Source of the DNA: Octopus sinensis | Taxonomy: Eukaryota | DNA length: 64,000 bases | NCBI RefSeq assembly: GCF_006345805.1 | Contig: NC_043006.1 | Location: 75,268,001 to 75,332,000, forward strand | Direction of reading: 5' to 3' | Shown: positions 5,944 through 63,285 of the stretch, one piece after another | How positions within the stretch are numbered: the stretch's first letter is position 1 | Layout of the letters: every line of letters starts with the position of its first letter | Translations under genes and position numbers: made by a program | Notes under the pieces: generated by a model | The model's database searches: none | Seen by the model: the letters and a program-made list of their open reading frames with translations, nothing else | What the model was told of the DNA's origin: nothing

Positions 5944-6520
5944 AAGGCGGCGACCTGGCCGAAAAGTTAGCAAGCCGGGCGAAATGCGTTGCCGTATTTC
6001 GTCTGCCGTTACGTTCTGAGTTCAAATACCGCCGAGGTCGGCTTTGCCTTTCATCCTTTCGGGGCGATTAAATAAGTACCAGTTACGCAATGGGGTCGAT
6101 ATAATCGACTTAACCCGTTTGTCTGTCCTTGTTTGTCCTCTCTGTGTGTAGCCCCTTGTGCGTAGTAAAGAAATAGGTATTTTGTCTGCCGCTACGTTCT
6201 GAGTTCAAATTCCGCCAAGGTCGACTTTGCCTTTCATCCTTTCGGGATCGATTAAATAAGTACCAGTTACGCAATGGGGTCGATATAATCGACTTAACCC
6301 GTTTGTCTGTTCTTTTTTGTCCTCTCTGTGTTTAGTCCCTTGTGGGTAGTAAAGAAATAGGTATTTCGTCTGTCTTTACCTTCTGAGTTCAAATTCCTCT
6401 GGGGTCAACATTGCCTTTGATCCTTTCGGGGTCGATAAATTAAGTACCAGTTGCGTACTCGAGTCGATCTAATCGACTGACCCCCCTCCCACAAAATTTC
6501 GGGCTTGTGCCTACAGTAGT
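5944..6520 (+). mobile_element. Family 1 tRNA-derived SINE, internally multimerised (two ~183-bp units plus terminal unit)
   Basis: Head AAGGCGGCGA; B box GAGTTCAAAT; central GCCTTTCATCCTTTCGGGGTCGA...AAGTACCAG domain (Meta/Sauria-SINE-like); junctions AAAGAAATAG|GTATTT at 6176/6177 and 6360/6361. Confidence 0.85.
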
Positions 6521-9210: not shown

Positions 9211-9487
9211 TCTGGGATGAGTCAGTCTCTTCTAGTACCTTGTTACTTAGCACACTTACCGGTTCGATTTCCAATCATTTACTTATTTATTTTTTTCTAA
9301 AACTTTCGTTGCGTCTTGCAACTCTCCCCGGGCACAATGAAATATGCTTCAACACACGAATTCCCATAAAGACTCTTGCAAACCAAATACAAAAGCGAAA
9401 TATACATACATACATACATATAGTATTTGTATATGGCCAACACGCCCTATATATATATCGTTTTTGTATAGGGCTAACAAACCTTAC

Positions 9488-9714
9488 CTAGAGAAAAAAA
9501 AGGTCATCCTATAGAAGAATCGACGACAATTCAAAAACAAGAATCGGGGTAGTTTCACTAAAAAACACTTGAGCACAGGGGTCTAGGCAATCGATTTAGC
9601 CCCTCGGTAAATCGATTACATCGTCCCCTGTGCTCTAGTGGTTCTTAGTGAATCGGCCCCGATCCTTGTTTTTGAATCATCGCTTCTTCTATAGCTTCGC
9701 TTCTTTTTCTCTAG
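9488..9714. other. 227-nt imperfect inverted repeat (rod-like hairpin)
   Basis: Five paired arms of 15, 11, 21, 8 and 16 bp plus a 10-bp apical stem, closing the loop at 9599-9607. Confidence 0.85.
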
Positions 9715-35921: not shown

Positions 35922-35953
<32 letters not shown>

Positions 35954-35955
<2 letters not shown>

Positions 35956-36757
35956 GGTGGTGAGCTGGTAGAATTATTAGCATGCTGGATGAAATGCTTA
36001 GCGGTATTTTGCTTGCCGCTACATTCTGAGGTTGGCATTGCCTTCTTTCATCCTTTCGGAGTCTATGAAATAAGTACCAGTTACACACTGGGATCAATAT
36101 AATTAACTAGCCCCCTTCCCTAAAATATTTTCAAGGCCTTGTGTCTAGAGAAGAAATATAAATAATAATAATTATTATCATTAAGAAGGTGTGCTGGCAG
36201 AATTGTTAGCACACTGGATAAAATACTAAGCAGCATTTCACTTGTCACTATGTTCTGGGTTCAAGTTCTGCTGAGATCGACTTTGCTTTTCATCCTTTAG
36301 GGGTCAATGAATTTAGTACCAGTGAAACACTGGGGTTGATATAATCGACTAGTCCTCTCCCTGCAAATTTAAGACCTTGTGCCTCCAGCAGAAAGAATTA
36401 TTATTATTATTAAGGTGGTGAGCTGGTAGAATTATTAGCATGCTGGATGAAATGCTTAGCGGTATTTTGCTTGCCGCTACATTCTGAGGTTGGCATTGCC
36501 TTCTTTCATCCTTTCGGAGTCTATGAAATAAGTACCAGTTACACACTGGGATCAATATAATTAACTAGCCCCCTTCCCTAAAATATTTTCAAGGCCTTGT
36601 GTCTAGAGAAGAAATATAAATAATAATAATTATTATCATTAAGAAGGTGTGCTGGCAGAATTGTTAGCACACTGGATAAAATACTAAGCAGCATTTCACT
36701 TGTCACTATGTTCTGGGTTCAAGTTCTGCTGAGATCGACTTTGCTTTTCATCCTTTC
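35954..36757 (+). repeat. Identical 346-bp direct duplication within a SINE chain (period 458)
   Basis: 35954-36299 matches 36412-36757 base for base as far as I can read. Confidence 0.85.
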
Positions 36758-37755
36758 AGGGTTGAAAAAATAAGTACCAGGTGAATACTTGAGTCGATGT
36801 AATGAGCTATCCTCTACCCTCAAAATCTCAGGCCTTGTGCCTATAGTAGAAAGACTTGTTATTGCTGTTGCTGTTGTTAATGTTATTTCACATTCATTGA
36901 ACTACAGCACTAAGCATGACTATCTCATTGTGAAAAAAAAACTGAACGAAAAGACAAAATTTTTCAACATGAATAAATATTAATATATTGATTTGGCCTT
37001 CACAGTTATCGTGAAATGGGTTTGTTTTGCAAATCTGGATATTAGCATGTTTGTTGGATAAATTTATCTGAGAGCTAGAAACTTTCATATCACAGTGATA
37101 GCAGAATCTGTTGGTTGTTTGTGGGGAAAGCAAGGTTATGATATATATCTTTGATGAAGACATATATTGATAATATCTGTAATAGAAACAAGTAAGTTAT
37201 TGACCTCATATATCAGAAAGTCAAGGTATGTTAATTGGTAAATCTATTAGAACATTGAATAGAATGCTTTGAAGTGTTTGCTTCAATGCTTTAGGTTCTG
37301 AGTTCAAATACTACCAAAGGCAACTTTTTATTATCTTTCTATTTCTTTGTTTGTCCATCTCTCTCACTTTGTCTCTCACTCTCCCCCTCTCTCTCCCACT
37401 ATATATATATATATATATCAAAAATGGTGTGTTATAACACTATTCCACATATAAAAAAAACAACCATACCAACAATCCAACATACTTCCATCATCAGCTG
37501 CCCCACGGATATCATTATGGTTTTAACACCTGTATGTATATATATATATAAAGGGAAAGCTTTTGAAAATAAACAAAAGATGAAGACATGTTGTGTACAA
37601 AACAAACAGATGTATTAGTATAGCGCTCAGGAATAGAAAAAGTCTTTTACGTTTCGAGCCTATGCTCTTCTAGAGAAAGGTACAAAGAAAAAAAATAAGG
37701 AGAGAAAAATAATGTGTGTAGTGGCGAACGATCTATCATGGCGTCTGACTCAGAC

Positions 37756-38711: not shown

Positions 38712-39940
38712 GATGATTGAAGCTTTTTTTTAGTAAGAATGAAAAACAGATAGATTCCTTAATATAGACTATAAGACTCTTCAGCAAAGATATAAACATA
38801 GAATTTGGCATAGATAAGTGTGAATTATTAGTTATGAGAAGGGGACATGTAGTCAACAGCAAAGGCATCCAATTACCAGCTGGTCAGACATTAAAATCAT
38901 TAAAAGAAGGAGAGAGTTATAAGTATCTAGGAGTATTAGAATCTGACAGAGTACTAACTATTGAAATGAAAACGAAAATTGAGAAGAAGTACATCCAAAG
39001 GGTGAGGAAGCTAATGAAGTCAAAGCTAAGTGGTTCAAATCTAGTGAAGGCTGTAAATATTTGGTCGGTATCATTACTTAGATACCCAACAGCTTTTGTA
39101 GATTGGACAAAAACTGAATTAGCAAAGTTAGACAGAAGAACTAGGAAGAAATTCAATATCAATGGAGGACTCCACCCAGGGTGAGGTGTAGCAAGATTAT
39201 ACTTACCTAGAAAGGAAGGCAGAAGTGAGTTAATATTAATGGAAGACTGTGTGGAGTTAGCTAGAGCAGATATAGACTCCTATGTGGGTAATAGTGAAGA
39301 AAGCTTATTGAAAGCGTGAGAGTCACAGCAAGACATAGGGAAACCAAAAATCCAAACGAAGTTAAAAACCAGTAGAAAGAACAGAAATTATCTGACTAGC
39401 ACAAAGCATTGCATGGTAAACCCAAACGAGGTTAAAAACCAGTAGAAAGAACAGAAATTATCTGACTGGCAGAAAGCATTGCATGGTAGATTCCTAAAGA
39501 TAATTGCAATAGTAAGACATGACTATAGTTTCAGAAATGAAAGCTGAAAAGTAGACAGAAAATTTGTTAGTAGCTGCACGGGATCAAGCATTAAGGACTA
39601 ATTGGATAAAATCCAAGATAGACAAAAACTAAGTAGATTCCCAATATGTTAGTCATATAGTAAGTGAATGTAGCATGCTGGCACAGAAAGAATGCTAGAA
39701 AAGACGTGTCAAGCTAAGGAGAGTAATCCATGAGAGTTATGTAAAAAGCTAGGATTTGAACATACTGATAAAAGGAATGAACGTGACCCTAGTAAAGTAC
39801 TAGAAAGTAAGAAATACAAGATGTGGGAGTTTAGCATTCAGGCTGACAGTGTAATAGAAGCTAGAAGGCCTGATTTAGTAGTAGTAGATAAAGAGAATAG
39901 AAAGTGCCAGATAATTGACTTTACAGTCAAGAATGTGAAG
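38712..39940 (+). mobile_element. Decayed R4/Dong-type LINE (RT C-terminal part, zinc finger, RLE)
   Basis: ORF 38834-39184 GESYKYLGVLE...KLDRRTRKK..GGLHP; later HIVSECSMLA and EARRPDLVVVDKENRKCQIIDFTV; several stops and frameshifts. Confidence 0.9.
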
Positions 39941-40822
39941 AACGTAAAGACAGACAAAATACTTATTTCTTTACTACCCACAAGGGGCTAAACACAGAGA
40001 GGACAAACAAGGACAGACAAACGGATTAAGTCGATTATATCGACCCCAGTGTGTAACTGGTACTTATTTAATCAATGCCGAAAGGATGAAAGGCAAAGTC
40101 GACCTTGGTGGAATTTGAACTCAGAACGTAAGGGCAGACAAAATACTGCTAAGCATTTTGCCCAGCGTGCTAACGGTTCTGCCAGCTCGCTGCCTTGAAA
40201 CATGTAAAAATATTCTTTTCTACTCTAGGCACAAGGCCCGAAATTTTGGGGGAGGCGAGGCCAGTCAATTCGATCAACCTCAGTACGCAACTGGTACTTA
40301 ATTTATCAACCCTGAAAGGATGAAAGGCAAAGTCGATCTTGGTGGAATTTGAACTCAGAACGTAAAGACAGGCGAAACACCCACTCAGCATTTTGTCTGG
40401 CATGCTAACGTTTCTTATTTCTTTACTGCCCACAAGGGGCTACACACAGAGGGGACAAACAAGGACAGGCAAATGGATTAAGTCGATTATATCGGCCCCA
40501 ATGCATAACTGGTACTTATTTAATCGACCCCGAAAGGATGAAAGGCAAAGTCGACCTCGGCGGAATTTGAACTCAGAACGTAGCGGCAGAAGAAATACCT
40601 ATTTCTTTACTACACAAAAGGGGCTACACACAGATGGGACAAACAAGGACAGACAAACGGATTAAGTCGATTACATCGACCCCAGTGCGTAACTGGTACT
40701 TATTTAATCGACCCCGAAAGGATGAAAGGCAAAGCCGACCTCGGCGGAATTTGAACTCAGAACGTAGCGGCTGACGAAATACTGCTAAGCATTTCGCCCA
40801 GCATGCTAACGTTTCTGCCAGC
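39941..40822 (-). mobile_element. Family 1 SINE concatemers
   Basis: Several reverse-complement units with CTATTTCTTTACTAC junctions; similar arrays at 49824-50117 and 62200-62612. Confidence 0.85.
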
Positions 40823-41539: not shown

Positions 41540-42410
41540 AGGAAAATCACCTCCGCAATCACCACTACCAGCACCACCAAAGCATCAAAATTACCACTAC
41601 CGAACTACCAAATGCCAAAACCACCTCTTCCAAAATTGCTACTATGAACACACCTTTCTATTAAAAAAAAAAAGAAAACAAAAAACAAGACATACCCATC
41701 ACTATCAAAATCACTACCACCAAAACCACCACTACTAAAACCAGCACCAACACCACCAGCACTTCATCCCACTATCCACCCCCTCCACCAATACCACTAA
41801 CACTAAAACCCCTACTATCAAAAACATCACTACTACTTCTACTGCTGCCACCACCACATCTACCATTGCCACTGCCACCTCTGCCACTGTCACCTCTACC
41901 ACTGCCACCACTGCCACTTCTACCACTGCCACTTCTACCATTGCCACTTCTACCACTGTCACATCTGCTACCACTACCATCACCACCTCTACCACTGCCA
42001 CACCCACCTCAGCTACCACCACCGCCACCTCTACCATGGCCACCACCACCTCTACCATTACCACCACTACCTCCACCATGGCCATCACCACCTCTACCAT
42101 TACCACCACTACCTCTACCACTGCCATCACCACCTCTACCCCTACCACCACCACATCTGCTGCTACCACCACCACCTCTACTGCTGCCACTACCATCTCT
42201 ATTACTATCACCACCACCTCTACCACTACCATCACCACCTCTACGACCACCTCTACCACTGCTACCACCACCTCTACTACTATCACAACCACATCTACCA
42301 CTGTCACCACCACCTCTACCCCTACCACCTCTTCTACCACCACCACCACCACCACCTTTACCACTGCCACCACCACCACCACCAATACCATCGCCAGCAC
42401 CATCAACCCT
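41540..42410. repeat. Degenerate (ACC/ACT)n trinucleotide array
   Basis: CACCAC/TACCAC units; open in three frames (poly-T, poly-P, poly-V). Confidence 0.9.
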
Positions 42411-43389
42411 ACCTGTGGTACTGTGTAATAGCTTTAAGTTCTACTGCAGATACTATTTAAATGCACAAATTTTTTCTTATTCTTTGCACCTATTAGAGTT
42501 TTTTTTCTTCTTATATATATTTCTTATTAAACCTGAGTCATACACTGTAAAAAGGTTGCTTACAGGTAGGGCATCAAACTGTAGGAAATTAGGCAAGAAA
42601 TTAACCACATGATCCACTCTGAACCATCTATGAATGGAACTGGATTGAGTCATGATGATCCATCCAACCTATGTGAAGGCATGTGGCCTAGTGGTTAGAG
42701 CATTGGGCTAACAATCATAAGGTAGTGAGTTCAATTCCTGGACTGGGCTGTGTGTTGTGCTCTTGAGCAAGACACTTTATTTCATGTTGCTCCAGTTCAC
42801 TTAGTTGTAGAAATGAGTTGTGACGTCACTGGTGCCAAGTTATATTGGCGTTTGCTTTTCCCTTGGATAACATTTGTTGCATGGAGAGAGGAGACTGGTA
42901 TGCACGAGTGACTGCTGGTCTTCCATAAACAATCTTGCCCACACTTGTACCTGAGAGAAGAACTTTCTAGGTGCAACACCTGACCAAAGAGGATTTCACC
43001 TGATCCATCCTGTGTTGGTGGCACATAAAATACACCATCCGAGCGTGGCCGTTCGCCAGCCTCGTCTGGCACCTGTGTCGGTGGCACATAAAAAGCACCC
43101 ACTACACTCACGGAGTGGTTGGCGTTAGGAAGGGCATCCAGCTGTAGAAACACTGCCAGATCTGACTGGCCTGGTGCAGCCTTCGGGCTTCTCAGACCCC
43201 TGTTGAACTGTCCAACCCATGCTAGCATCGAAAGCGGACGTTAAACGATGATGATGATGATGATGATGATCCAACCCACCTATGCCAACAGAGAAAATGG
43301 ATGTAAAATACTGATGTAAAACCAATTTTTCTATGTTAAGATTTGGCATTCTAATATAAATAAAAAAATATTTTTCGTTGCTTAATCAG

Positions 43390-49543: not shown

Positions 49544-50576
49544 ACTGTTTAGATCCTTGAAAATGATGGATTGCACACAGTGTGTCTATGTTGCTAGTAT
49601 CAGCTTTGCTTTTCATTCTTCTGGGGTCAATAATTTTTATACTAATTAATGGATCTTCGTTATTACTCTCTATGTAATTTTTTTCTTTCATTGGTTGTCT
49701 TTCGACATGGTGAAATATAGACAGGAGAAATTAATTGCTTAGATTTTTCAGATATGTATCTGATAGAATTTGTGTGGCATAATAATATTATTATACACTC
49801 AAGGTGGCGAGCTGGCAGAAACGAAGGATGAAAGGCAATGTCGACCTCGGCGGAATTTGAACTCAGCACGTAAAGACAGACGAAATACCTATTTCTTTAC
49901 TACCAACAAGGGGCTAAACACAGAGGGGACAAACAAAGACAGACACACGGATTAAGTCGATTATATCGACCCCAGTGCGTAACTGGTACTTATTTAATCG
50001 ACCCCGAAAGGATGAAAGGCAAAGTCGACCTCGGCGGAATTTGAACTCAGAACGTAAAGACAGACGAAATACCGCTAATAATTTCGCCCGGCGTGTTAAC
50101 GTTTCTGCCAGATCGCCTTGTGCCTTTATTGGAGGGGCAGGGCTTAATGGTCAGGGTGTAGCAATAATGCTCGTAAGACTGTTGTTTTGATTCCTGGAAC
50201 AGACAATGCGTTGTTCTTGAGCAAAACACTTTGTTTTATGTTGCTCCAGTTTACTCAGCCAGCAAAAGTGAGTTTTCCTGCGAGGGACTGGCATCCCATC
50301 CAGTGGGGTGTACATACACCAGAGAATCCTGGAAACCCACCCTATGAGTCTATATGGCTCGGAAAAGAGCTTTTTTTAAAAATTATCTTATAATAGAAAA
50401 TATTGTCAATGGTTAGAAACACATTTTAATGAATTGTGCAATTATTATTTTAATTTTTTGTACCTGTCGCTGTTGATGTAAGTAAGATGTTTGAAAATGT
50501 TTAATTAATTATCAAATTTAATGCACATAGCATTCATCAGTTTGATTATAATGTTTAATTAATTTGTCTTTTGCAG

Positions 50577-50645
50577 GTAAGTTCCACAAATTTTTGTCAA
50601 TAAAATTTTAAGAAATCCTTTGAATATTCAATACGAAAAAACGAG
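50577..50645 (+). other. 69-nt non-coding exon / recursive-splice-type site
   Basis: TTAATTTGTCTTTTGCAG|GTAAGT...GAG|GTAAGA: strong acceptor immediately followed by a perfect donor, second donor 69 nt on; stops in all three frames. Confidence 0.55.
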
Positions 50646-52126
50646 GTAAGAAATTAATTATAAACTATCTTAAAATTCTAATTAAGTTTGATTAATAGAT
50701 TTCAGTTATGAATTTATTCAGCATGTCATATGCATGTCTTTAATGATTTCTCAACACTTTTGTAATTTACTCTCAACAGTTAATTATTTTCATATACGAC
50801 TGATGAGGATGACGTGTGTAATAGCAGCAGTAGTAGTAATAGTAATAGTAGTGGTGATAGTGGTTGCGATGGAGTGAGAATATACGTGGTTTGGTCTTCT
50901 CGGGATATCAAATAATATTCCTACTTTACCAGCAGTTAATTGAATGGTATGACAGTATGGATATCCAATGATACGAAAACATGCAAATATTTATGAGTTT
51001 TCAAAACATATTCCACGGATGGAAATCGATGCCTAAAGAAAAAAACAAAAATGAAAAAAAAAACAAAACAAATGAAAGATAAAACACAACCGGAATAACA
51101 GTAATGTAAATACATAAACAAACTTGTATGTATTCATACACCCACTGTATTGACACAGTCACAAATATATATACACACACATATCCATACATACACATAT
51201 ATTTACACACATACATATATATTCATACACCTGCACAGACATATATATATATACATGCATATATATCTCTTTTACTTGCTTCAGTCATTTGACTGCGGCC
51301 ATGCTGGAGCACCGACTTTAGTCGAGCAAATCGACCCCAGGACTTATTCTTTGTAAGCCTTGTACTTATTCTATCGGTCACTTTTGCCGAACCGCTAAGT
51401 TACGGGGACCTAAACACACCAGCATCGGTTGTCAAGCGATGTTGGGGGGACAAACTCAAACACATACACATACATACGTATATATATATACAAATTTAAT
51501 TTGTCTGACTATGAAGAGTGCCACTTGCTTGGCAGTCGATAGCCAAACTATTGTTCTTTTTTTCTGTACTTTCTGCTGAAGACGAGAGATCCTCCTCCTC
51601 CCAGTGATAAGATCTTTACTCTACGTGACAATTGTACATAACAGTGAATTTTTAAGAACTCCGTTTCTTATGAATTGTTGTTACTGACCTTCACTGGATT
51701 TATTGGTTTCTGTATCTCAGCCCGTCTTTATAACAAACTCCAGTTGGCCAAAAGAACAATAACAACAACAACAATAACAAAATACCCTTTTGTGACGGGG
51801 GAAATTTGGTTGGTAGGAACAGTGTTGAAACTTGTTGAGTAATATGTCAGCAGGGAATGACCGGGTCAGTGTGGTGCTAAACAAAAGCCAACCACCACCA
51901 CCATCACCAACAACAACCACACTACTGCCATACCAACGACGTCACCACCAAAACCACCACCACAACTAATAACAACAAAACTGACACGAACAACAGCAAC
52001 ACCACCACCACCATTACCAACAGCGGCTCTACCACCACAACCACTGCCATAAACAACATGACCAACGCAACCACCATTACCAATAGCAACAGTAATATCG
52101 TCACCGCCGCCGCCACCGCCACCACC

Positions 52127-54305: not shown

Positions 54306-55001
54306 TCACAAAGACAGAGGAATTACATGGATGCAAGCTCTATCCTGTTTCCCCAGTGGTAATAGCAAAAATTTCGCTAGACTTTATTTGTGTGTGCCTG
54401 TGTGTGTTGGGCTGAACTGTGGCCTGATATTTGTGTGTGCCTGAGTGTGTTGGGCTGAACTGTGGCCTGATATTTGTGTGCCTAAATATATACTTATATA
54501 TTGTATATATGCTAAAAGACTTTTAAGTCACCCTCTGTATTATTCTTGAAATTATAATTGTTTGATTGTCTTGGCAGGCCTTGTCTCCTCAACTTAGTAT
54601 CTAACTCAAAAATCTTCCACTTTTCGCACACAGCAAGATTAAAACTTGTTTAATCTTAACATATGTTTTCGTATATTTTAGCTGTTTTGTATATATGTAT
54701 GACTTAATAGAGAACACGCGTGGGTAGAATCAATTTGAATTTACTGGTATAGAATATGTATTTCTTTATTACAATTATAAAAATTAATACATAGAAAGGA
54801 CGAATACAGGACATACATACATACAAGAAAATTTAAGAGAATCGATTAAAAAAAGTTTCGTTTGTATTCGTTATAAGTAATAGTTTTTGCGTAACTAGTG
54901 TTACAAACACTTGTAGCTGACCTTTGTGATTTTACTGGAGCTTTCACACCCCGGCAATTGTTGAGGCCCTGCAGCTTCCACTTCCTCTCTCTCCTCCATG
55001 G

Positions 55002-58000
55002 TCAAGCTGGCCTTCTCGTACCCACCTTTCTTTCCACTTCCTTCCATCTATTCGCATACACTCCCCGCGGCAGGGTCCTCCTCTCCAGTCCCATCTTGCT
55101 TCTCAGATGATATCTGAAGTAGGTGAGCAAGCCGGGCCGGAGACAAATGACCCTGTCGCGGTTCCTTCCATTCTCGTTCTCCACATGCATTCCTTTACCA
55201 CTGCAACCGTGCAGTGAAAACATGCCTCACCTTCCTTCGAGAGTCCAGTTGGCGGTATCATCTTAATCATAGACTCAGCCGACAGCTGTACTCGTCCCAG
55301 ATGCGATAACACGTGTTCTGCGTAACTTATCAAGTCGTTCAACTTCCGACAATGAAAAAAAGCGTGCTGAACGGTTTCATCGTCCAGCCCGCATCTTGGA
55401 CACGTCGGTGGCACTGGAACTCCGTGCCGTGATAACTTTTCGCGAACAGGTAAAGCATTCCTGTAGCACTGCCAAGCCAGGGATCTTTGAAAATTATCCA
55501 AATACCCCGACCTGAACGTTTTCTTAAACAGATTGGCAAGCTGGTTTTCATCAAACCCCAGAGCCCCTCCTAGGACGTCATCGTTTTTACCTTCTACCAG
55601 CCCTCTATAAAATGCCGAGGTGGTATTTCCGCAGCCGGCCTTGCCCGTCCTGTGGATCAGCGTGAGTGCCTGTCGGCACTCCTTTTGCCATGGAGTCAGA
55701 TTGCATCTTCTGATGTAACCGGGTTTAAAATTAACTAAGGAGGCCGGTCTCGGAAAAAATCCCTCTGCCAACGGACTCCACACCTTATCACCTTCCAGGT
55801 GGTGCCAGAGATGTCTTAGTCTCAACGCATGTCTGCGCATCATTAACCAAGGCATCCCTAACCCACCCTTTAACGGTTCTTGACAGCACACGGAGCGTCT
55901 CACAAGTGGCTTTCCTCCTTTCCACAAAAAGCGGAAGAGGGCTCGTTCCAACTTGTTAAGCCATGAGTCGGGGCAAGGGACGACGGTCAGGCGGTAGGTG
56001 ATTACGGATGCAATAAACATCTGCACCACCTCCGCCCTTCCTTTCAAGGACAGAGACCTTCCGGACCAGGTCCGTATTATGGCCTCCACCTTGCCCGTCA
56101 CCTCGCTCCAGTTCTTCTCCGTTGGGAGTCCGGTCCAAACCAGACTCCCAGCAACTTAACAGGGCCATCCGTCCAGTGTCCCACAACACTGGACAATATC
56201 GGCTTGTTCCTCCAGGTGCCGAGGCGCAAGCCGACCGATTTGTCCCTGTTAACCTTTGCTCCTGCCACCGCCTCGTATCCTCTGATAGCCTCCTCTACAC
56301 CAGGTAGTTGGGCCTCCTTGGACACGATGAGGGTGATGTCATCCGCATAGGCAGTGACCGACCTCCCACCTCCGATTCCATCTGAGTTACTCCCCAGCCT
56401 CTCCAACCTTCGCAGTAGTGGCTCGAGAGCCAATACGTACAAAAGTGGTGACAAGGGGCACCCCTGACGTACTGAACATTCGATCGAAAACGGTTCTGTT
56501 AGGTAACCGTTTATCTGGACGGTGGACTTGATGCCGCTGTACATAGCGGAGATCCACCCGCGGAATTCGGGACCCAGTCCGGTCGCTTCGAGGACCGCCG
56601 CCAGGTACCCATGGTCTACCCTATCGAAGGCTTTACTTTGGTCCAAGTGGACCATTACCCCACCTTTGCCGGTTATTTTACCCACCCTATCTAAGGTGTA
56701 GCGTATAAGGTGAAGGTTGTCCTGGATCGACCTGCCTGGAATTGCACATGTCTGTGCTCTCCCTACAAGTTTCTCCACGACAACCGTCAACCTTTTTGCT
56801 AACACCTTGGCCAAAATCTTTAACTCTACATTAAGTAGAGTTATGGGCCTGTAGTTACTAATCATATCCCCTTTGCTCGGGTCTTTCTGGATTAGCGTCA
56901 CCACTCCCCGGCTTACAGAACTGGGAATTCTCCCGTTCTGCTGCCAGTTCGTGTAGACGCCTGCCAGTATTCCCCCGAACAAATCCGGCATATTTTGGTA
57001 AAACTCGTAGGGCAGACCATCCAGCCCCGGCGATTTCTCCCCGGCGCACTCGGCCAGCACTTCCCTTATTTCCGCGGGAGTGATCGCTCCCTCACAGCAC
57101 TCCGCCTCACGCCCCGCGAGCCGCGGCCCGCCGGCCAGGAAGTCCTTAAGGCACTCCCCCGGTCCAGCGGGCCACCACCCCCGAACGCGCGCGCGAAATG
57201 CTGGTGAAGAAACTTTTGCATCTCCTCCTGTCCATAGATCTTTTGTCCCTGTTCGCCAGTCAAAGATTTTATTGAGGCTCTGTTGCCTCTCTTACTCTCC
57301 ACACGACGGGCCCATCCGGCTACGTTAACACCTTCTCGTTTCCCGGCGCGCAGCTTAGCTCTGACTCTGCAACCTTCGTGTTTGGAGTCAAGGTGTCGGT
57401 ACAATACCGTCCTTGCCGCCAGTACTCCGGATGCAGAGCCAGCTTCCATTGCCTCGTCTAGCTTCTTAACTAAATCGCCCTCTAGACTAGCCCTATCTGT
57501 CCTTATCTGATTGCTAAATCTAACGGACTCTAATCGAATGGCTCTTTTGAGGGCGTGCCACCATCTATTGTTAATGACGGTGCCGCACAATGCCCTCTGA
57601 ACTAACTCCTTAATCCGGGTACGGAAGTCTTCACAATTCAAAATAGCCTTGTTCAGCTTCCAGTACCCGGGTCCCTGTCTATGACACTTGTCTAATTGCA
57701 CCTCACACGTCACAAACTTGTGATCCGAGTAAGGTACAATATGAAATTGTGGACAACTAAACGTATCCTTATCTCTTTTTTTATAATTATCCTATCTAGG
57801 TACGATCTGTGTGAGCCGTCGTTGTTACTCCACGTCCACTGTGGAACGCTCGGCTCATCCAGTCGGTAACGGTCCACTAGATCAAAGCTCTCCAGTAGAC
57901 CCTTGAGGCTAGGATTCCCCTTCCTATTAGTTGAGCCAACACTGTCGATGTGCGCTTCAAGGACAGTGTTAAAGTCCCCTACTAGTATTACTGTTTTCGA

Positions 58001-58387
58001 CGTCGCCAGAAAGGGCTCCAGGCTTCGAAAGAAACCCGACTGTCTACCCTCGTTCGGGGCGTAGACAGCTACCAACCTGAAGGACTGTTTACTTGCGTGA
58101 GTCACATCCAGGACAACCAGCCTGCCTTCTGGGTCCAGAAAGACAGTACTTACCTGCAAGTCCAAGCTCTTCCTGATGAAGACTGCCACGCCTCCGCCTC
58201 TTCCTCGGCTAGGAGAAATAAATTTCTCGAAACCATTTAGAAGAGGTGAGAACGCTTGGGTCTCGCTCATCTTGGACTCGGTTACGATAGCAACATCTAT
58301 ACCGTGTGTCGTGAGGTCGTTCAGGAAACAAATTTGTTTCCATTTCGACCCCATTCCACGTATGTTTATACAGCCCAGCTTGGCCAT
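55002..58387 (-). CDS. Tx1-type ORF2: APE endonuclease, reverse transcriptase, C-terminal CCHC (four -1 frameshifts; ~1129 aa if repaired)
   Basis: MAKLGCINIRG, IVTESK, VYAPNE, LVGDFN, YLDRI, SDH (after repair), KSPGLDGLPYEFY, NYRPITLLN, LDQSKAFDRVDH, VRQGCPLSP, AYADD, CPRC...ETVQHAFFHC. Frameshifts near 57776-57782, 57146, 56123, 55133. Confidence 0.92.
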
Positions 58388-58415
58388 TGTGGGCGAGGGA
58401 GGAAAATAATTATAC

Positions 58416-59839
58416 TCACGGTTGTGAAAGGGAGCACGGCGGTCTGATTTTGCCTGCTTCCCTTTCTTCCGCTACTGCAGGGCCTTTGACCGGCGTTGCC
58501 ACTGGGCTCTGGGTTGGTGTGGTTGCCGGGGTTATTGTTAGTTTTCCTTCTAACACCTCTTTGGTGACATCTCTTATTAGGCGGTTCTTCAGGTGTTCCT
58601 GAAGAACCTCCTCCTTCCATTCGTTCTCGCCTACCTTGGCGAAGCGCGCAATTGCTTTTCCATCTGAGGTTCTGCTATACAGCATGAACCTCGACAGTTT
58701 GCAGCATTTGTAAACTTTTTCGTTTTTTTCATCAAACGCAATTATTTTTTCATTTTTCAATAAACATTTTTTAGGATCTTGTTTTACGGGGAGGGGCTTG
58801 GCAAACTGTTTTCCAATGAAAACAGTGCCGTGGGGGTAGGGTTGGGGGATTTGTTTAATGTGTGTGTCTGCAGTGTTAGTTGTTTTTTTCCTTGTTTGGG
58901 GAGGGGAGTCCAGGGTATTTTCTTTTTTTCTTTTGTGCGTAACTTGGGTGTATTCCATCGGTTCTATTTGGTCTATTTTTGCTTCCGTATTTTTCTTTGT
59001 CGTTTTGTTGTTCTTCTTAGCTTCCTCTCCCTCCGCATTGGGTACACTTGGAGGGGCCGCTTCTTCTGTTCTTTTTTTCCTGATGCAATTGGAACGGACG
59101 TGACCCTTTTCTCCACACTTGAAGCATCTGGGTCTTCGTCCTTCCACCGACACTCTCATGGACGTGCCATCCTCGTTAAAAATCCTGTCAGGCAGGCTCT
59201 CCAAGATCTTGTTCTCTGCCTGTACGAGGAGCTCCAGAGTCTGACCCCTCCAACGTACCGCTTCCTTCCTTCTCATTTGCAGTATGTTCATTTCGCGTTC
59301 CACATCATGTAAGACCGCCGCTGCTACCCACATGGTGTCGTATCCTCTGGGTATGTCTTCAACCGTTACCTTTGCGGTTCTCTTCCCCATATACGAGGGT
59401 AGCAGCATGATGTCGTCGTTTTTAAGGGTCAACGACGACACCTCCTTCGCCACCTCTGCCGTGTCAAAGTGTGCTTCGATCGTGGCACTTCGTGCACCTC
59501 TCACTATATGGCGAATTTTATCCCACACCGGGGCCAAGCATTTCTCAACGGTTTCGTTTTTTACTTCCATGATCTTTTTTTCTTTAAAGTTGTACACTTT
59601 ATAGATTACGATCTTTTCCTTAATTCTTGCACCTTCGCTTGCGGCGGCACAAGCCTTATTTCTCCTCCTTCTAGTTTTACCAAATTCCTATATTCGTACA
59701 GTTGTTCAATCTTGAATTCTATCTCCAACATGGCGCCGCCCACCGCGGCCGAGAATGATTGCCTGGGTACTTGATTTTCCTCTTTTTCACCTTTTCCCAT
59801 CACGGGAAAGTCCTCCTTCGACGTCAGGTCGAACTCCAT
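58416..59839 (-). CDS. Tx1-type ORF1 (RRM-like region, CCHC zinc knuckle; one -1 frameshift near 59610; ~474 aa if repaired)
   Basis: ORFs 59839-59606 and 59597-58416 join as ...ELRKRSVIYKVYNF with one added G; CFKCGEKGHVRSNC knuckle. Confidence 0.85.
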
Positions 59840-60651: not shown

Positions 60652-63285
60652 GTTTTTCCTATACTTTGTTTATCGTAATCGTGAATGCTGCTAAGTAGAC
60701 CACTTAGCTGGAAGTAGACTGTATTAACATACTCTATGTAGAGCAGTGACAGTTGCACATCTAACTGTAAACACAGGAAGAACTATAAAATGTATGTTGC
60801 CTGTAAATCATGAATTGATTTACATTATTGATAATTTAATGTCATATTCAATAGGATTCATTCTTTCAGAAATTCCAATGTTCAGGGAGTTATTAGCTTA
60901 AATGAAAAAATGTGTGTGTGTGTAGAATATATGCGTTGTGAAATACTACACGTAACAAAAAGTTCGGGTATTTCTTGTTAACCACTGAAGAGGTGTATAA
61001 TTATAACATAATTTTCAACAAACAATTCTATAGTCTTCACAATTAATTTAACAAAACGCGTGTATGTTTTAGAAAGCATAAAATACCATGTATGTTTATT
61101 TGTTTTTGCTTAATACTACACATAGATGTGTAATTATGATGTGCATATACACAAACACAGGTGCGCGCTCATATATTTACATAATACACACATACAGGTG
61201 TCTCTTACGTCTTAAGTTGACCAGTGGCAGATGAAATTCTGTAATCATGTTTACACCCTTCCAAAAGTTAGTGTTGTATCCCTTTCTCTCTCATAACTTT
61301 ATTTATGCGCCTTTTTCAAGCCTAGCCAGGCTCATGGGCTCGGTTTCCCGGCTTCTATGGTGTATGTGTCTCCCTCCCCAGCTGGACGGGACGTCAGTCC
61401 ATTGCAGCGTTACTCAAGAAACAAGAAGAAAGAGTGAGAGAAAGTTGGGGCAAAAGAGTACAACAGGGGTCGCCACCACCCCCTGCCGGAGCCTCGGGGG
61501 AGCTTTATATGTTTTCGCTCAATAAACACACACAACGCCCTGTCTGGGAATCGAAACCGCGATCCTCCGACCGCGAGTCCGCTACCCTAACCACTAGGCC
61601 ATTGCGCCTCCACTCTCTCATGACTTAGCGCTTGTATAAATAGAGTGCGATAAAATAAATACGAAACTAAAAAAAATATCAGAGTATGGAGTGGGGTCGA
61701 TAAGGTCGACTAAATGACCGCCTCCCGAAGGTGGTGTTCTTGCATAACCGTAATTCCATCACTGAAATTAGTGAATGAATAAACGAATAAATAAATGTGT
61801 TCGTTGATTGTGTCATTGGTTTATGAGATGAATTCGACTTTATCGAAGCTCGAGATTAATACCATTAAAACGTCCTGATATCGGTTGATATATGGAATGT
61901 TAAACTTAGCAACTGCTTGTTATTTCAATTCAAGTCCTGAGTTTTAATTAAATCAGATTAGCCGTTCAGAAATTGCCGAAGTCATCGGATATTTTGACAA
62001 GGACAGACTGCTACTTTGGAATGATTTTATATTGATGCCGTTTGCAATTATTGGTTGTCTCATATTTTGCATCGATGTTGTTGCCGCTGCTTCTGTGTAT
62101 AGGAGGAAAATGATTACTCTGGTTTTGAATCTCACCAAAAATGTGGTATATCTGTGGTAAATACATAGGCGATAGAGTCTCACATATGGAATATATATGT
62201 CTTTACTACCCACAAGGGGCTAAACATAGAGGGGACAAACAAGGACAGACAAACGGATTAAGTCGATTACATCGACCCCAGTGCGTAACTGGTACTTAAT
62301 TTATCGACCACGAAAAGATGAAAGGCAAAGTGGACCTCGGCGGAATTTGAACTCGGAACGTAACGACAGACGAAATACGTATTTCTTTATTACCCACAAG
62401 GAGCTAAAGACAGAGGGGACAAACAAGGACAGACATAAGTATTAAGTCGATTGTATCGACCCCAGTGCGTAACTGGTACTTAATTTATCGACCACGAAAG
62501 GATGAAAGGCAAAGTCGACCTCGGCGGAATTTGAACTCGGAACGTAACGACAGACGAAATACGGCTACGCATTTCGCCCGGCGTGCTAACGCTTCTGCCA
62601 GCTCGCCGCCTTTAGAAATACCAAGCAAGGGATTTAATTTTGATAATCCTTTCTACTCAAGTCACACGGCCTGAAATTTTGGAGGAAGGATAAAGTCGAT
62701 CACATCGACCCCAATGAGTAACTGGTACTTATTTCATCGATCCCGAAAGGATGAAATGCGAAGTCGACCTCGGCGGAATTTGAACACAGAACGCAAGGAC
62801 GGACGGAATGCTGTGAAGCATTTCGTCCGGCGCGCTAACGATTCTCCCAGCTCGCCACTTTAGATTTATCTCCAATAATACCAGATAATCCACGTAATAT
62901 GTTGGCTTCCCTACGATTTCGAATAATGTGGTCGCTTGATTGTTCTCTTACGGTAGGACGAATTTGGCTTGTTTAGTCCTGCTAGGGGCCTACAGCATTT
63001 TTCACAGATGTGACAGTAATGGGTGCCTTTTACAACAGGTGTTCAGAGAGCGTAATACATACGCTGACGCACACCTTCATTTCCCCTTGAAATTTGTCAT
63101 TGCTTTGCTTTTTTTTTGGCCATAGTATGCAATACATAATGGAGATACAGTTCTATATTTAAGAGATGAGGAATTATGTACATTATTTACATTACTTACA
63201 TTTGATGGATATTTGTCCTCATCTTGTTTGTTGTTAACACAACGTTTTTGCTGATATACCTTCCAGCCTTCATTAGGTGTCATAT

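What the first reader, a model, noticed from the sequence alone, without database searches (positions are those of the whole stretch)
50555..50651. Recursive-splicing (ratchet point) signature with a poison exon
Seen: AT-rich unique DNA with a pyrimidine tract and TGCAG fused directly to GTAAGT (50576/50577), a second donor GAG|GTAAGA at 50645/50646, stops in all three frames of the 69 nt between, and an internal AATAAA. Known: this architecture defines recursive splice sites with cryptic RS-exons in long introns of Drosophila and vertebrates. Inference: a cephalopod recursive site in a very long plus-strand intron. The Tx1 lying antisense fits an intronic setting. An ordinary UTR or lncRNA exon is the alternative.
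Basis: partly seen in the sequence, partly recalled or inferred. Interest (0 to 1): 0.7.

Follow-up and report, generated by a model that had tools for sequence, protein, structure and literature searches.

The report
Splice-signal look-alike, function unproven
The splice-acceptor/splice-donor motif and the 69-base mini-exon behind it are really in the sequence, but nothing available shows that this DNA is transcribed, so it is most likely a chance pseudo-exon and not a proven recursive splice site.

Summary

Singly, the elements are ordinary. AGGTAAGT occurs 4 times against 2.2 expected. AATAAA occurs 194 times. Stops in all frames are found in 53 % of local 69-mers.

The complete architecture under a narrow, post-hoc definition is rarer, about 0.003 per window. 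That still implies roughly 100 chance copies in a genome of a few gigabases.

The two best acceptor|donor motifs in the window lie on the opposite strand (39206, inside what looks like a LINE remnant; 9487). No coding exon was found on either strand. Repeat orientation is mixed and base skew is ambiguous.

The defining tests for recursive splicing cannot be run here: a sense-strand long intron, conservation, and junction, lariat or saw-tooth RNA evidence.

Estimates: chance pseudo-exon about 0.55; real recursive site about 0.15; ordinary non-coding or poison exon about 0.15. Interest is low.

The parts
50555..50573 (+). Pyrimidine-rich stretch before the acceptor-like CAG (ttaattaatttgtcttttg). 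It includes TT at -5/-6, and there is no AG in the 37 nt upstream of the acceptor AG.
   Evidence: 11 of the 15 bases before CAG are pyrimidines, and 14 of 20.
50574..50582 (+). Juxtaposed acceptor-like and donor-like motif CAG|GTAAGT, with the junction at 50576/50577.
   Evidence: It ranks third of 385 AGGT sites in the window on a rough generic score.
50577..50645 (+). 69-nt candidate cryptic exon (RS-exon or pseudo-exon), with stops in all three frames and 24.6 % GC, the same as its flanks.
   Evidence: Stops in all frames occur in 53 % of local 69-mers.
50599..50604 (+). AATAAA hexamer inside the 69 nt.
   Evidence: There are 194 AATAAA in the window on both strands, so it is not distinctive.
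50643..50651 (+). Second donor-like motif GAG|GTAAGA, with the junction at 50645/50646.
   Evidence: AGGTRAG occurs only 13 times in the window on both strands, which makes it the rarest component.
49901..50340 (.). Two interspersed SINE-like repeats directly upstream of the AT-rich stretch (context only).
   Evidence: Repeat A occurs at 26 loci (9 same orientation, 17 opposite). Repeat B occurs at 6 loci.
55103..59597 (-).
   Evidence: zf-CCHC, Exo_endo_phos, RVT_1 and zf-RVT; the ORFs lie in different frames; 57 % identity to P0001 and 31 % to a protein named Transposon TX1.

Best explanation
The site is a pseudo-exon. It is an acceptor-like site, a donor-like site fused to it, and a second donor-like site 69 nt downstream. 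These most likely arose by chance in very AT/T-rich, single-copy, non-coding DNA between a SINE-like repeat and a microsatellite, and they have no demonstrated use by the spliceosome. If the plus strand is transcribed at all, the signals are good enough for occasional cryptic use, but nothing here shows that. Shown: the motifs, their rarity and the local context. Inferred: that they are not used.
For: - Each element occurs at about chance frequency.
- The narrowly defined whole architecture is expected about 0.003 times per 64-kb window. That is about 100 chance copies in an assumed genome of roughly 2.7 Gb, and more under looser rules.
- Stronger acceptor|donor motifs sit on the opposite strand, at 39206 and 9487. 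By eye, 39206 lies in a remnant of a LINE reverse transcriptase. Strong motifs therefore arise here without a consistent transcribed strand.
- Seven acceptor/donor pairs at exon-like spacing exist in the window, three of them overlapping the LINE interval.
- The 69 nt show no rise in GC over the flanks and no RNA structure (z = +1.19).
- No exon was detected on either strand.
- Rfam gave no match.
- Repeat orientation is mixed.
Against: - The full architecture matches the published definition of fly ratchet points closely: pyrimidine tract, TT at -5/-6, CAG|GTAAGT, a short downstream exon with its own consensus donor, and stop codons.
- Under strict rules it is expected only once in 300-400 windows.
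- The window has a modest excess of strong juxtaposed motifs: 3 observed against about 0.6 expected, P about 0.03.
- An exon-free 64-kb stretch is what a very long intron looks like.
- Unique DNA has T>A on the plus strand. In mammals that goes with the sense strand, although the GC skew here does not agree.
Confidence: 0.55

Rival explanations
1. It is a genuine recursive splice site (ratchet point) in a plus-strand intron longer than the window. Exon definition across 50577-50645 brings the upstream exon to 50577. The regenerated donor (exon end + GTAAGT) then outcompetes GAG|GTAAGA, so the 69-nt exon is removed with the rest of the intron. If it is included instead, the stop codons lead to NMD.
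For: - All motif-level features are present.
- TT at -5/-6 is found in 99.5 % of fly ratchet points (bioRxiv 10.1101/006163).
- A short, out-of-frame cryptic exon with its own donor fits the published model (PMC8605326).
- GTAAGT is at least as good a donor as GTAAGA. After ligation to an exon ending in AG it would pair with U1 over 8 bases against 7 (inference).
- The architecture is rare by chance in one window.
- The window is exon-free.
Against: - There is no evidence of plus-strand transcription.
- Better motifs lie on the minus strand.
- The plus strand has only one other, weak candidate in 64 kb (12295).
- Published work needed conservation or RNA intermediates to separate real sites from control AGGT motifs (PMC6110457). 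Neither is available here.
- Recursive splicing has not been reported in cephalopods, and the organism itself is unverified.
Confidence: 0.15
2. It is an ordinary small exon of a non-coding RNA, a UTR, or an alternatively included poison cassette that merely happens to begin with GTAAGT. Both flanking sites are used conventionally.
For: - The acceptor-like and donor-like sites are strong and 69 nt apart.
- The stops in all frames fit a non-coding or NMD exon.
- Mammalian work counts thousands of expressed exons that begin with a donor-like motif (PMC8605326 citing Blazquez 2018).
Against: - GC content is no higher than in the flanks.
- No neighbouring exons were detected.
- No transcript evidence is available.
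- Stops in all frames are uninformative in this sequence.
Confidence: 0.15
3. It is a cryptic last exon. The acceptor at 50576/50577 is used and the transcript is cleaved after the AATAAA at 50599-50604 (intronic polyadenylation).
For: AATAAA lies 23 nt downstream of the acceptor-like site. Cryptic last exons in long introns are a known class (PMC7997972, listed).
Against: AATAAA occurs 1.5 times per kb per strand here. The resulting terminal exon would be only about 40-55 nt. There is no transcript evidence.
Confidence: 0.03

Closest known systems
Drosophila intronic ratchet points with cryptic RS-exons (Ubx, kuz, Bx; Duff et al., Joseph et al.)
   Same: Pyrimidine tract with TT at -5/-6. CAG|GTAAGT. 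A short downstream exon (about 50 nt in flies, 69 nt here) with its own donor. Exon content that cannot be read through.
   Different: Fly sites are defined by saw-tooth RNA profiles, junction and lariat reads, and very high conservation of the acceptor|donor motif, and they sit in the sense strand of introns of known genes. None of this is shown here. The host gene, its strand and even the organism are unknown.
Vertebrate RS-exons (Sibley 2015, Blazquez 2018, as cited in PMC8605326 and PMC6224609)
   Same: Exon definition followed by competition between the regenerated donor and the RS-exon donor. The exon carries a stop codon if it is included.
   Different: Only a handful of fully suppressed vertebrate sites in long introns were established, all with RNA evidence. 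This candidate rests on sequence alone.
Pseudo-exons: intronic or intergenic pairs of splice-site look-alikes that are not spliced (reviewed for DMD in PMC7175933)
   Same: Acceptor-like and donor-like motifs at exon-like spacing in non-coding DNA, no coding capacity, and composition equal to the flanks. Several such pairs exist in this same window.
   Different: This one also starts with a perfect GTAAGT, which makes it the rarest of the pairs in the window.

Membership tests
Recursive splice site / ratchet point with cryptic RS-exon | Juxtaposed acceptor and donor: pyrimidine tract, YAG|GTRAGT | tested here: met
   11 of 15 pyrimidines, then CAG|GTAAGT at 50576/50577.
Recursive splice site / ratchet point with cryptic RS-exon | TT at -5/-6 (99.5 % of fly ratchet points; a fly criterion) | tested here: met
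   (..cttttgcag|gt); criterion taken.
Recursive splice site / ratchet point with cryptic RS-exon | Short downstream exon closed by its own donor | tested here: met
   GAG|GTAAGA at +69. It is the only one of the four ratchet-like sites in the window with a close consensus donor.
Recursive splice site / ratchet point with cryptic RS-exon | Regenerated donor at least as strong as the RS-exon donor | tested here: inconclusive
   GTAAGT against GTAAGA favours it. The exon side of the regenerated donor comes from an unknown upstream exon.
Recursive splice site / ratchet point with cryptic RS-exon | Lies in the sense strand of a long intron of an expressed gene | tested here: inconclusive
   No exon on either strand. 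No gene record retrieved. Repeat orientation mixed. Plus-strand skew is T>A but C>=G.
Recursive splice site / ratchet point with cryptic RS-exon | Acceptor|donor motif conserved in related species above control AGGT sites | not testable with these tools
   No eukaryotic genome collection can be searched by DNA. An exact 28-mer scan of metagenome contigs found nothing.
Recursive splice site / ratchet point with cryptic RS-exon | RNA intermediates: junction reads into the site, lariats from it, saw-tooth coverage | not testable with these tools
   No RNA data are available.
Poison (NMD) cassette exon | Premature stop on inclusion | tested here: inconclusive
   Stops are present in all three frames, but so they are in 53 % of local 69-mers. 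The host reading frame is unknown.
Poison (NMD) cassette exon | Included in a fraction of transcripts and stabilised when NMD is blocked | not testable with these tools
   No RNA data are available.
Pseudo-exon | Splice-site look-alikes at exon-like spacing, no coding capacity, composition like the flanks | tested here: met
   Seven such pairs exist in the window.
Pseudo-exon | Not used in RNA | not testable with these tools
   No RNA data are available.
Tx1-type (L1 superfamily) non-LTR retrotransposon (55103-59597, minus strand) | Apurinic-type endonuclease + reverse transcriptase + C-terminal zinc-binding domain, with an ORF1 carrying a zinc knuckle | tested here: met
   Exo_endo_phos 6.3e-14, RVT_1 8.5e-33, zf-RVT 7.8e-11, zf-CCHC 5e-4.
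Tx1-type (L1 superfamily) non-LTR retrotransposon (55103-59597, minus strand) | Placement in the Tx1 clade | tested here: inconclusive
   31 % identity to a coral protein that its source names 'Transposon TX1 uncharacterized 149 kDa protein'. No phylogeny was made.
Tx1-type (L1 superfamily) non-LTR retrotransposon (55103-59597, minus strand) | Intact reading frames (an active copy) | tested here: not met
   ORF2 is split into four ORFs (55103-56101, 56098-57060, 57066-57713, 57710-58387), each in a different frame from its neighbour.

The most novel reading that the evidence does not exclude
50576/50577 is a working recursive splice site with a suppressed 69-nt RS-exon inside a plus-strand intron longer than 64 kb of a cephalopod gene. 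That would be the first ratchet point described outside insects and vertebrates.
Probability: 0.15. Interest if true: 0.45.

Novelty: not a real feature. Interest (0 to 1): 0.14.

Why it matters
If the site were real, it would extend recursive splicing to a third animal lineage with very long introns. It would also give a concrete locus for asking whether ratchet points are an ancestral solution to splicing long introns. As it stands it is one motif match without transcript or conservation evidence, in a genome where about a hundred equally good matches are expected by chance. Its practical value is as one entry in a genome-wide list to be checked against total RNA-seq, not as a finding on its own.

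Tried and rejected
- **Host exons.** I took all stop-to-stop ORFs of at least 40 aa outside self-repeats and recognisable transposon remnants. I concatenated them and searched the 5.8-billion-protein collection in two queries: plus-strand ORFs of at least 55 aa, then the remaining plus-strand ORFs and the longer remaining minus-strand ORFs. Neither gave a hit. Forty-one short minus-strand ORFs (40-58 aa) and all ORFs under 40 aa were not searched.
- **Locating the window in a public record.** Exact look-up of four LINE ORFs found nothing.
- **Organism.** The closest LINE relative (P0001, 57 %) sits on a 3-kb contig of GCA_024449705.1. I could not name that organism; a paper search for the accession was empty.
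- **Transposon remnants.** I tried to confirm the other remnants I recognised by eye. Pfam gave nothing significant. PDB gave only an R2 protein at E = 0.17 and nothing for two others. tblastn with the LINE relatives hit only the Tx1-like element. Those calls, and their orientations, rest on my own reading.
- **Non-coding RNA.** Rfam found none.
- **Other copies.** An exact scan of metagenome contigs for the 28-mer across the junction found none.
- **RNA structure.** Imperfect AT-only inverted repeats flank the candidate exon, but the fold is less stable than shuffled sequence. I rejected this as a structure that loops out the exon.
- **GTAAG cluster.** Four GTAAG lie at 50478-50646. By my own estimate this is not significant after correcting for the number of windows.

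Full report
**Observation.** It reads ...ttaattaatttgtcttttgcag|GTAAGTTCC..., with the acceptor-like AG ending at 50576 and GTAAGT at 50577-50582. A second donor-like motif, GAG|GTAAGA, has its junction at 50645/50646. AATAAA lies at 50599-50604. The 69 nt in between have stops in all three frames. Eleven of the 15 bases before CAG are pyrimidines, positions -5/-6 are TT, and there is no AG in the 37 nt upstream of the acceptor AG. The stretch is very AT-rich: 24.6 % GC in the 69 nt and 22-24 % in the flanks. Region 50376-50810 has no other copy in the window.

**Chance.** Taken singly, the elements are unremarkable.
- CAGGTAAGT occurs twice in the window against 0.54 expected, and 7 of 100 shuffles reach 2.
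- AGGTAAGT occurs 4 times against 2.18 expected.
- AATAAA occurs 194 times and is found in 6-8.5 % of 69-mers.
- Stops in all three frames occur in 26 % of all 69-mers and 53 % of local ones.

The rare component is the second consensus donor. AGGTRAG occurs only 13 times on both strands. I defined the whole architecture as YAG|GTAAGT, at least 10 of 15 pyrimidines, and AGGTRAG 30-200 nt downstream. Its expected count is about 0.003 per window in Markov simulations. It is 0.0025 in 400 permuted-motif controls that keep the real sequence. So the architecture is uncommon in one window. Three cautions apply. The definition was fitted to the site after the fact. The site was picked out by a reader looking for striking things. 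And 0.003 per 64 kb still means about 100 chance copies in an assumed genome of roughly 2.7 Gb (my inference). With looser rules, ratchet-like motifs occur twice on each strand, and GTRAG occurs 1.5 times per kb per strand.

**Other motif matches in the window.** I scored all 385 AGGT positions with a rough generic acceptor|donor score, using my own weights from the metazoan consensus. The site ranks third. The best is on the minus strand at 39206 (tcacttctgccttcctttctag|GTAAGT, 14 of 15 pyrimidines). It lies antisense to an ORF at 38768-39181 that I read as a remnant of a LINE reverse transcriptase; the only tool support is a PDB match to an R2 protein at E = 0.17. The second best is also on the minus strand, at 9487. 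Both strands cannot be the sense strand of one gene, so strong motifs clearly arise here without function. The window has a modest overall excess of such motifs: 3 at or above the site's score against about 0.6 in block shuffles, P about 0.03. Part of this reflects natural pyrimidine tracts, which shuffles break up. Only 50577 has a close consensus donor behind it. Seven acceptor/donor pairs at exon-like spacing exist in the window, three of them overlapping the LINE interval.

**Context.** The window is 46 % self-repetitive and full of microsatellites. Two SINE-like repeats lie directly upstream of the site, at 49901-50340. A trinucleotide-type repeat follows at about 50818-50860.

On the minus strand, 55103-59597 encodes a zinc-knuckle ORF1, an Exo_endo_phos endonuclease, RVT_1 and zf-RVT. 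Its closest relative is 57 % identical (P0001), and it is 31 % identical to a protein that its source names Transposon TX1. ORF2 is broken into four ORFs, each in a different frame from its neighbour, so this copy is decayed.

One element 4.5 kb away on the minus strand says almost nothing about the transcribed strand. The SINE-like repeat A occurs at 9 loci in one orientation and 17 in the other.

**Is there a plus-strand gene?** I searched the non-repeat ORFs of at least 40 aa against 5.8 billion proteins and found no hit. That covered every plus-strand ORF and the longer minus-strand ones; 41 short minus-strand ORFs were left out. Exact look-ups of window ORFs found no public gene record, and Rfam found nothing. 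The window is therefore either inside an intron longer than 64 kb or intergenic. Unique DNA shows T>A on the plus strand (skew -0.040) but C slightly above G (-0.017). In mammals the sense strand of introns shows T>A together with G>C (established knowledge, not established for cephalopods), so the result is ambiguous. The 8-kb bin holding the site has the opposite AT skew.

**Comparison with known recursive sites.**
- Fly ratchet points are juxtaposed acceptor and donor motifs with a prominent pyrimidine tract and TT at -5/-6 in 99.5 % of cases. They are much more conserved than other AG|GT sites in the same introns. They were established from saw-tooth coverage, junction reads and lariats (bioRxiv 10.1101/006163).
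- They are followed by short cryptic exons of about 50 nt, poorly conserved and usually out of frame, with their own donor. The choice between the two donors depends largely on their relative strength (PMC8605326).
- Later work again relied on nascent RNA and on conservation relative to control AGGT motifs (PMC6110457).

The present site meets every motif-level criterion. It could not be tested on any criterion that separates real sites from controls. I found no report of recursive splicing in cephalopods; one paper mentions both terms incidentally. That the window is cephalopod DNA is itself unverified here. The repeat landscape is compatible with it only from my memory.

**Verdict.** On the interpretation I cannot tell.
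- **Chance pseudo-exon, about 0.55.** This is the most likely reading.
- **Working recursive site, about 0.15.** This assumes that real sites with this exact architecture number in the tens, against roughly a hundred chance copies, and that cephalopods use recursive splicing at all.
- **Ordinary non-coding or poison exon, about 0.15.**
- **Cryptic last exon using the AATAAA, about 0.03.**

Mapping stranded total or nascent RNA and aligning related genomes would settle the question quickly.

Noticed in passing
window 39201-39230, minus strand (junction 39207/39206): This is the best ratchet-like motif in the window: tcacttctgccttcctttctag|GTAAGT, with 14 of 15 pyrimidines. It lies on the strand opposite to the finding, antisense to an ORF (38768-39181, +) that looks like a LINE reverse-transcriptase remnant. 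It has no close downstream donor.
   Followed up: partly
window 9487-9510, minus strand: This is the second-best ratchet-like motif (ccttttttttctctag|GTAAGG) in single-copy DNA. The nearest donor-like site is 228 nt downstream (CCG|GTAAGT at 9259). It lies about 29.7 kb from the 39206 site on the same strand.
   Followed up: partly
window 55103-59597, minus strand: A decayed Tx1/L1-like LINE. ORF1 has a zinc knuckle. ORF2 (endonuclease, RT, zf-RVT) is split into four ORFs, each in a different frame from its neighbour. The closest relative is 57 % identical, on a 3-kb contig of GCA_024449705.1 (organism not identified).
   Followed up: partly
window 5994-6478, 40416-40782, 62196-62563; also 35939-36863: A SINE-like repeat of about 184 nt often sits in head-to-tail pairs (period 184, 2-2.6 copies, 88-93 % matches). 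There is also a 458-nt unit repeated twice. The family occurs at 26 loci in the window, in both orientations.
   Followed up: partly
window 50496-50510 and 50550-50564: An exact 15-nt direct repeat, AATGTTTAATTAATT, spaced 54 nt apart. The second copy forms part of the region just upstream of the acceptor-like site. AT-only imperfect inverted repeats (50541-50565 / 50651-50675) bracket the candidate exon, but the predicted fold is weaker than shuffled sequence.
   Followed up: yes
window 50478-50650, plus strand: Four GTAAG lie within 170 nt (50478, 50482, 50577, 50646). This is the only such cluster outside a microsatellite. By my own rough estimate it is not significant after correcting for the number of windows.
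   Followed up: partly
whole window, single-copy fraction (25.4 kb): The plus strand has T>A (AT skew -0.040, in 7 of 8 bins) with GC skew near zero (-0.017). This is a possible but ambiguous trace of transcription-linked asymmetry.
   Followed up: partly
window 41838-42413: A long imperfect 21-nt-period repeat (TCTACCACTGCCACCACCACC, about 19-20 copies) gives open reading frames on both strands. No Pfam match.
   Followed up: no
window 54385-54480: A 43-nt unit repeated 2.2 times at 98 % identity, a few hundred bases beyond the 3' side of the LINE.
   Followed up: no
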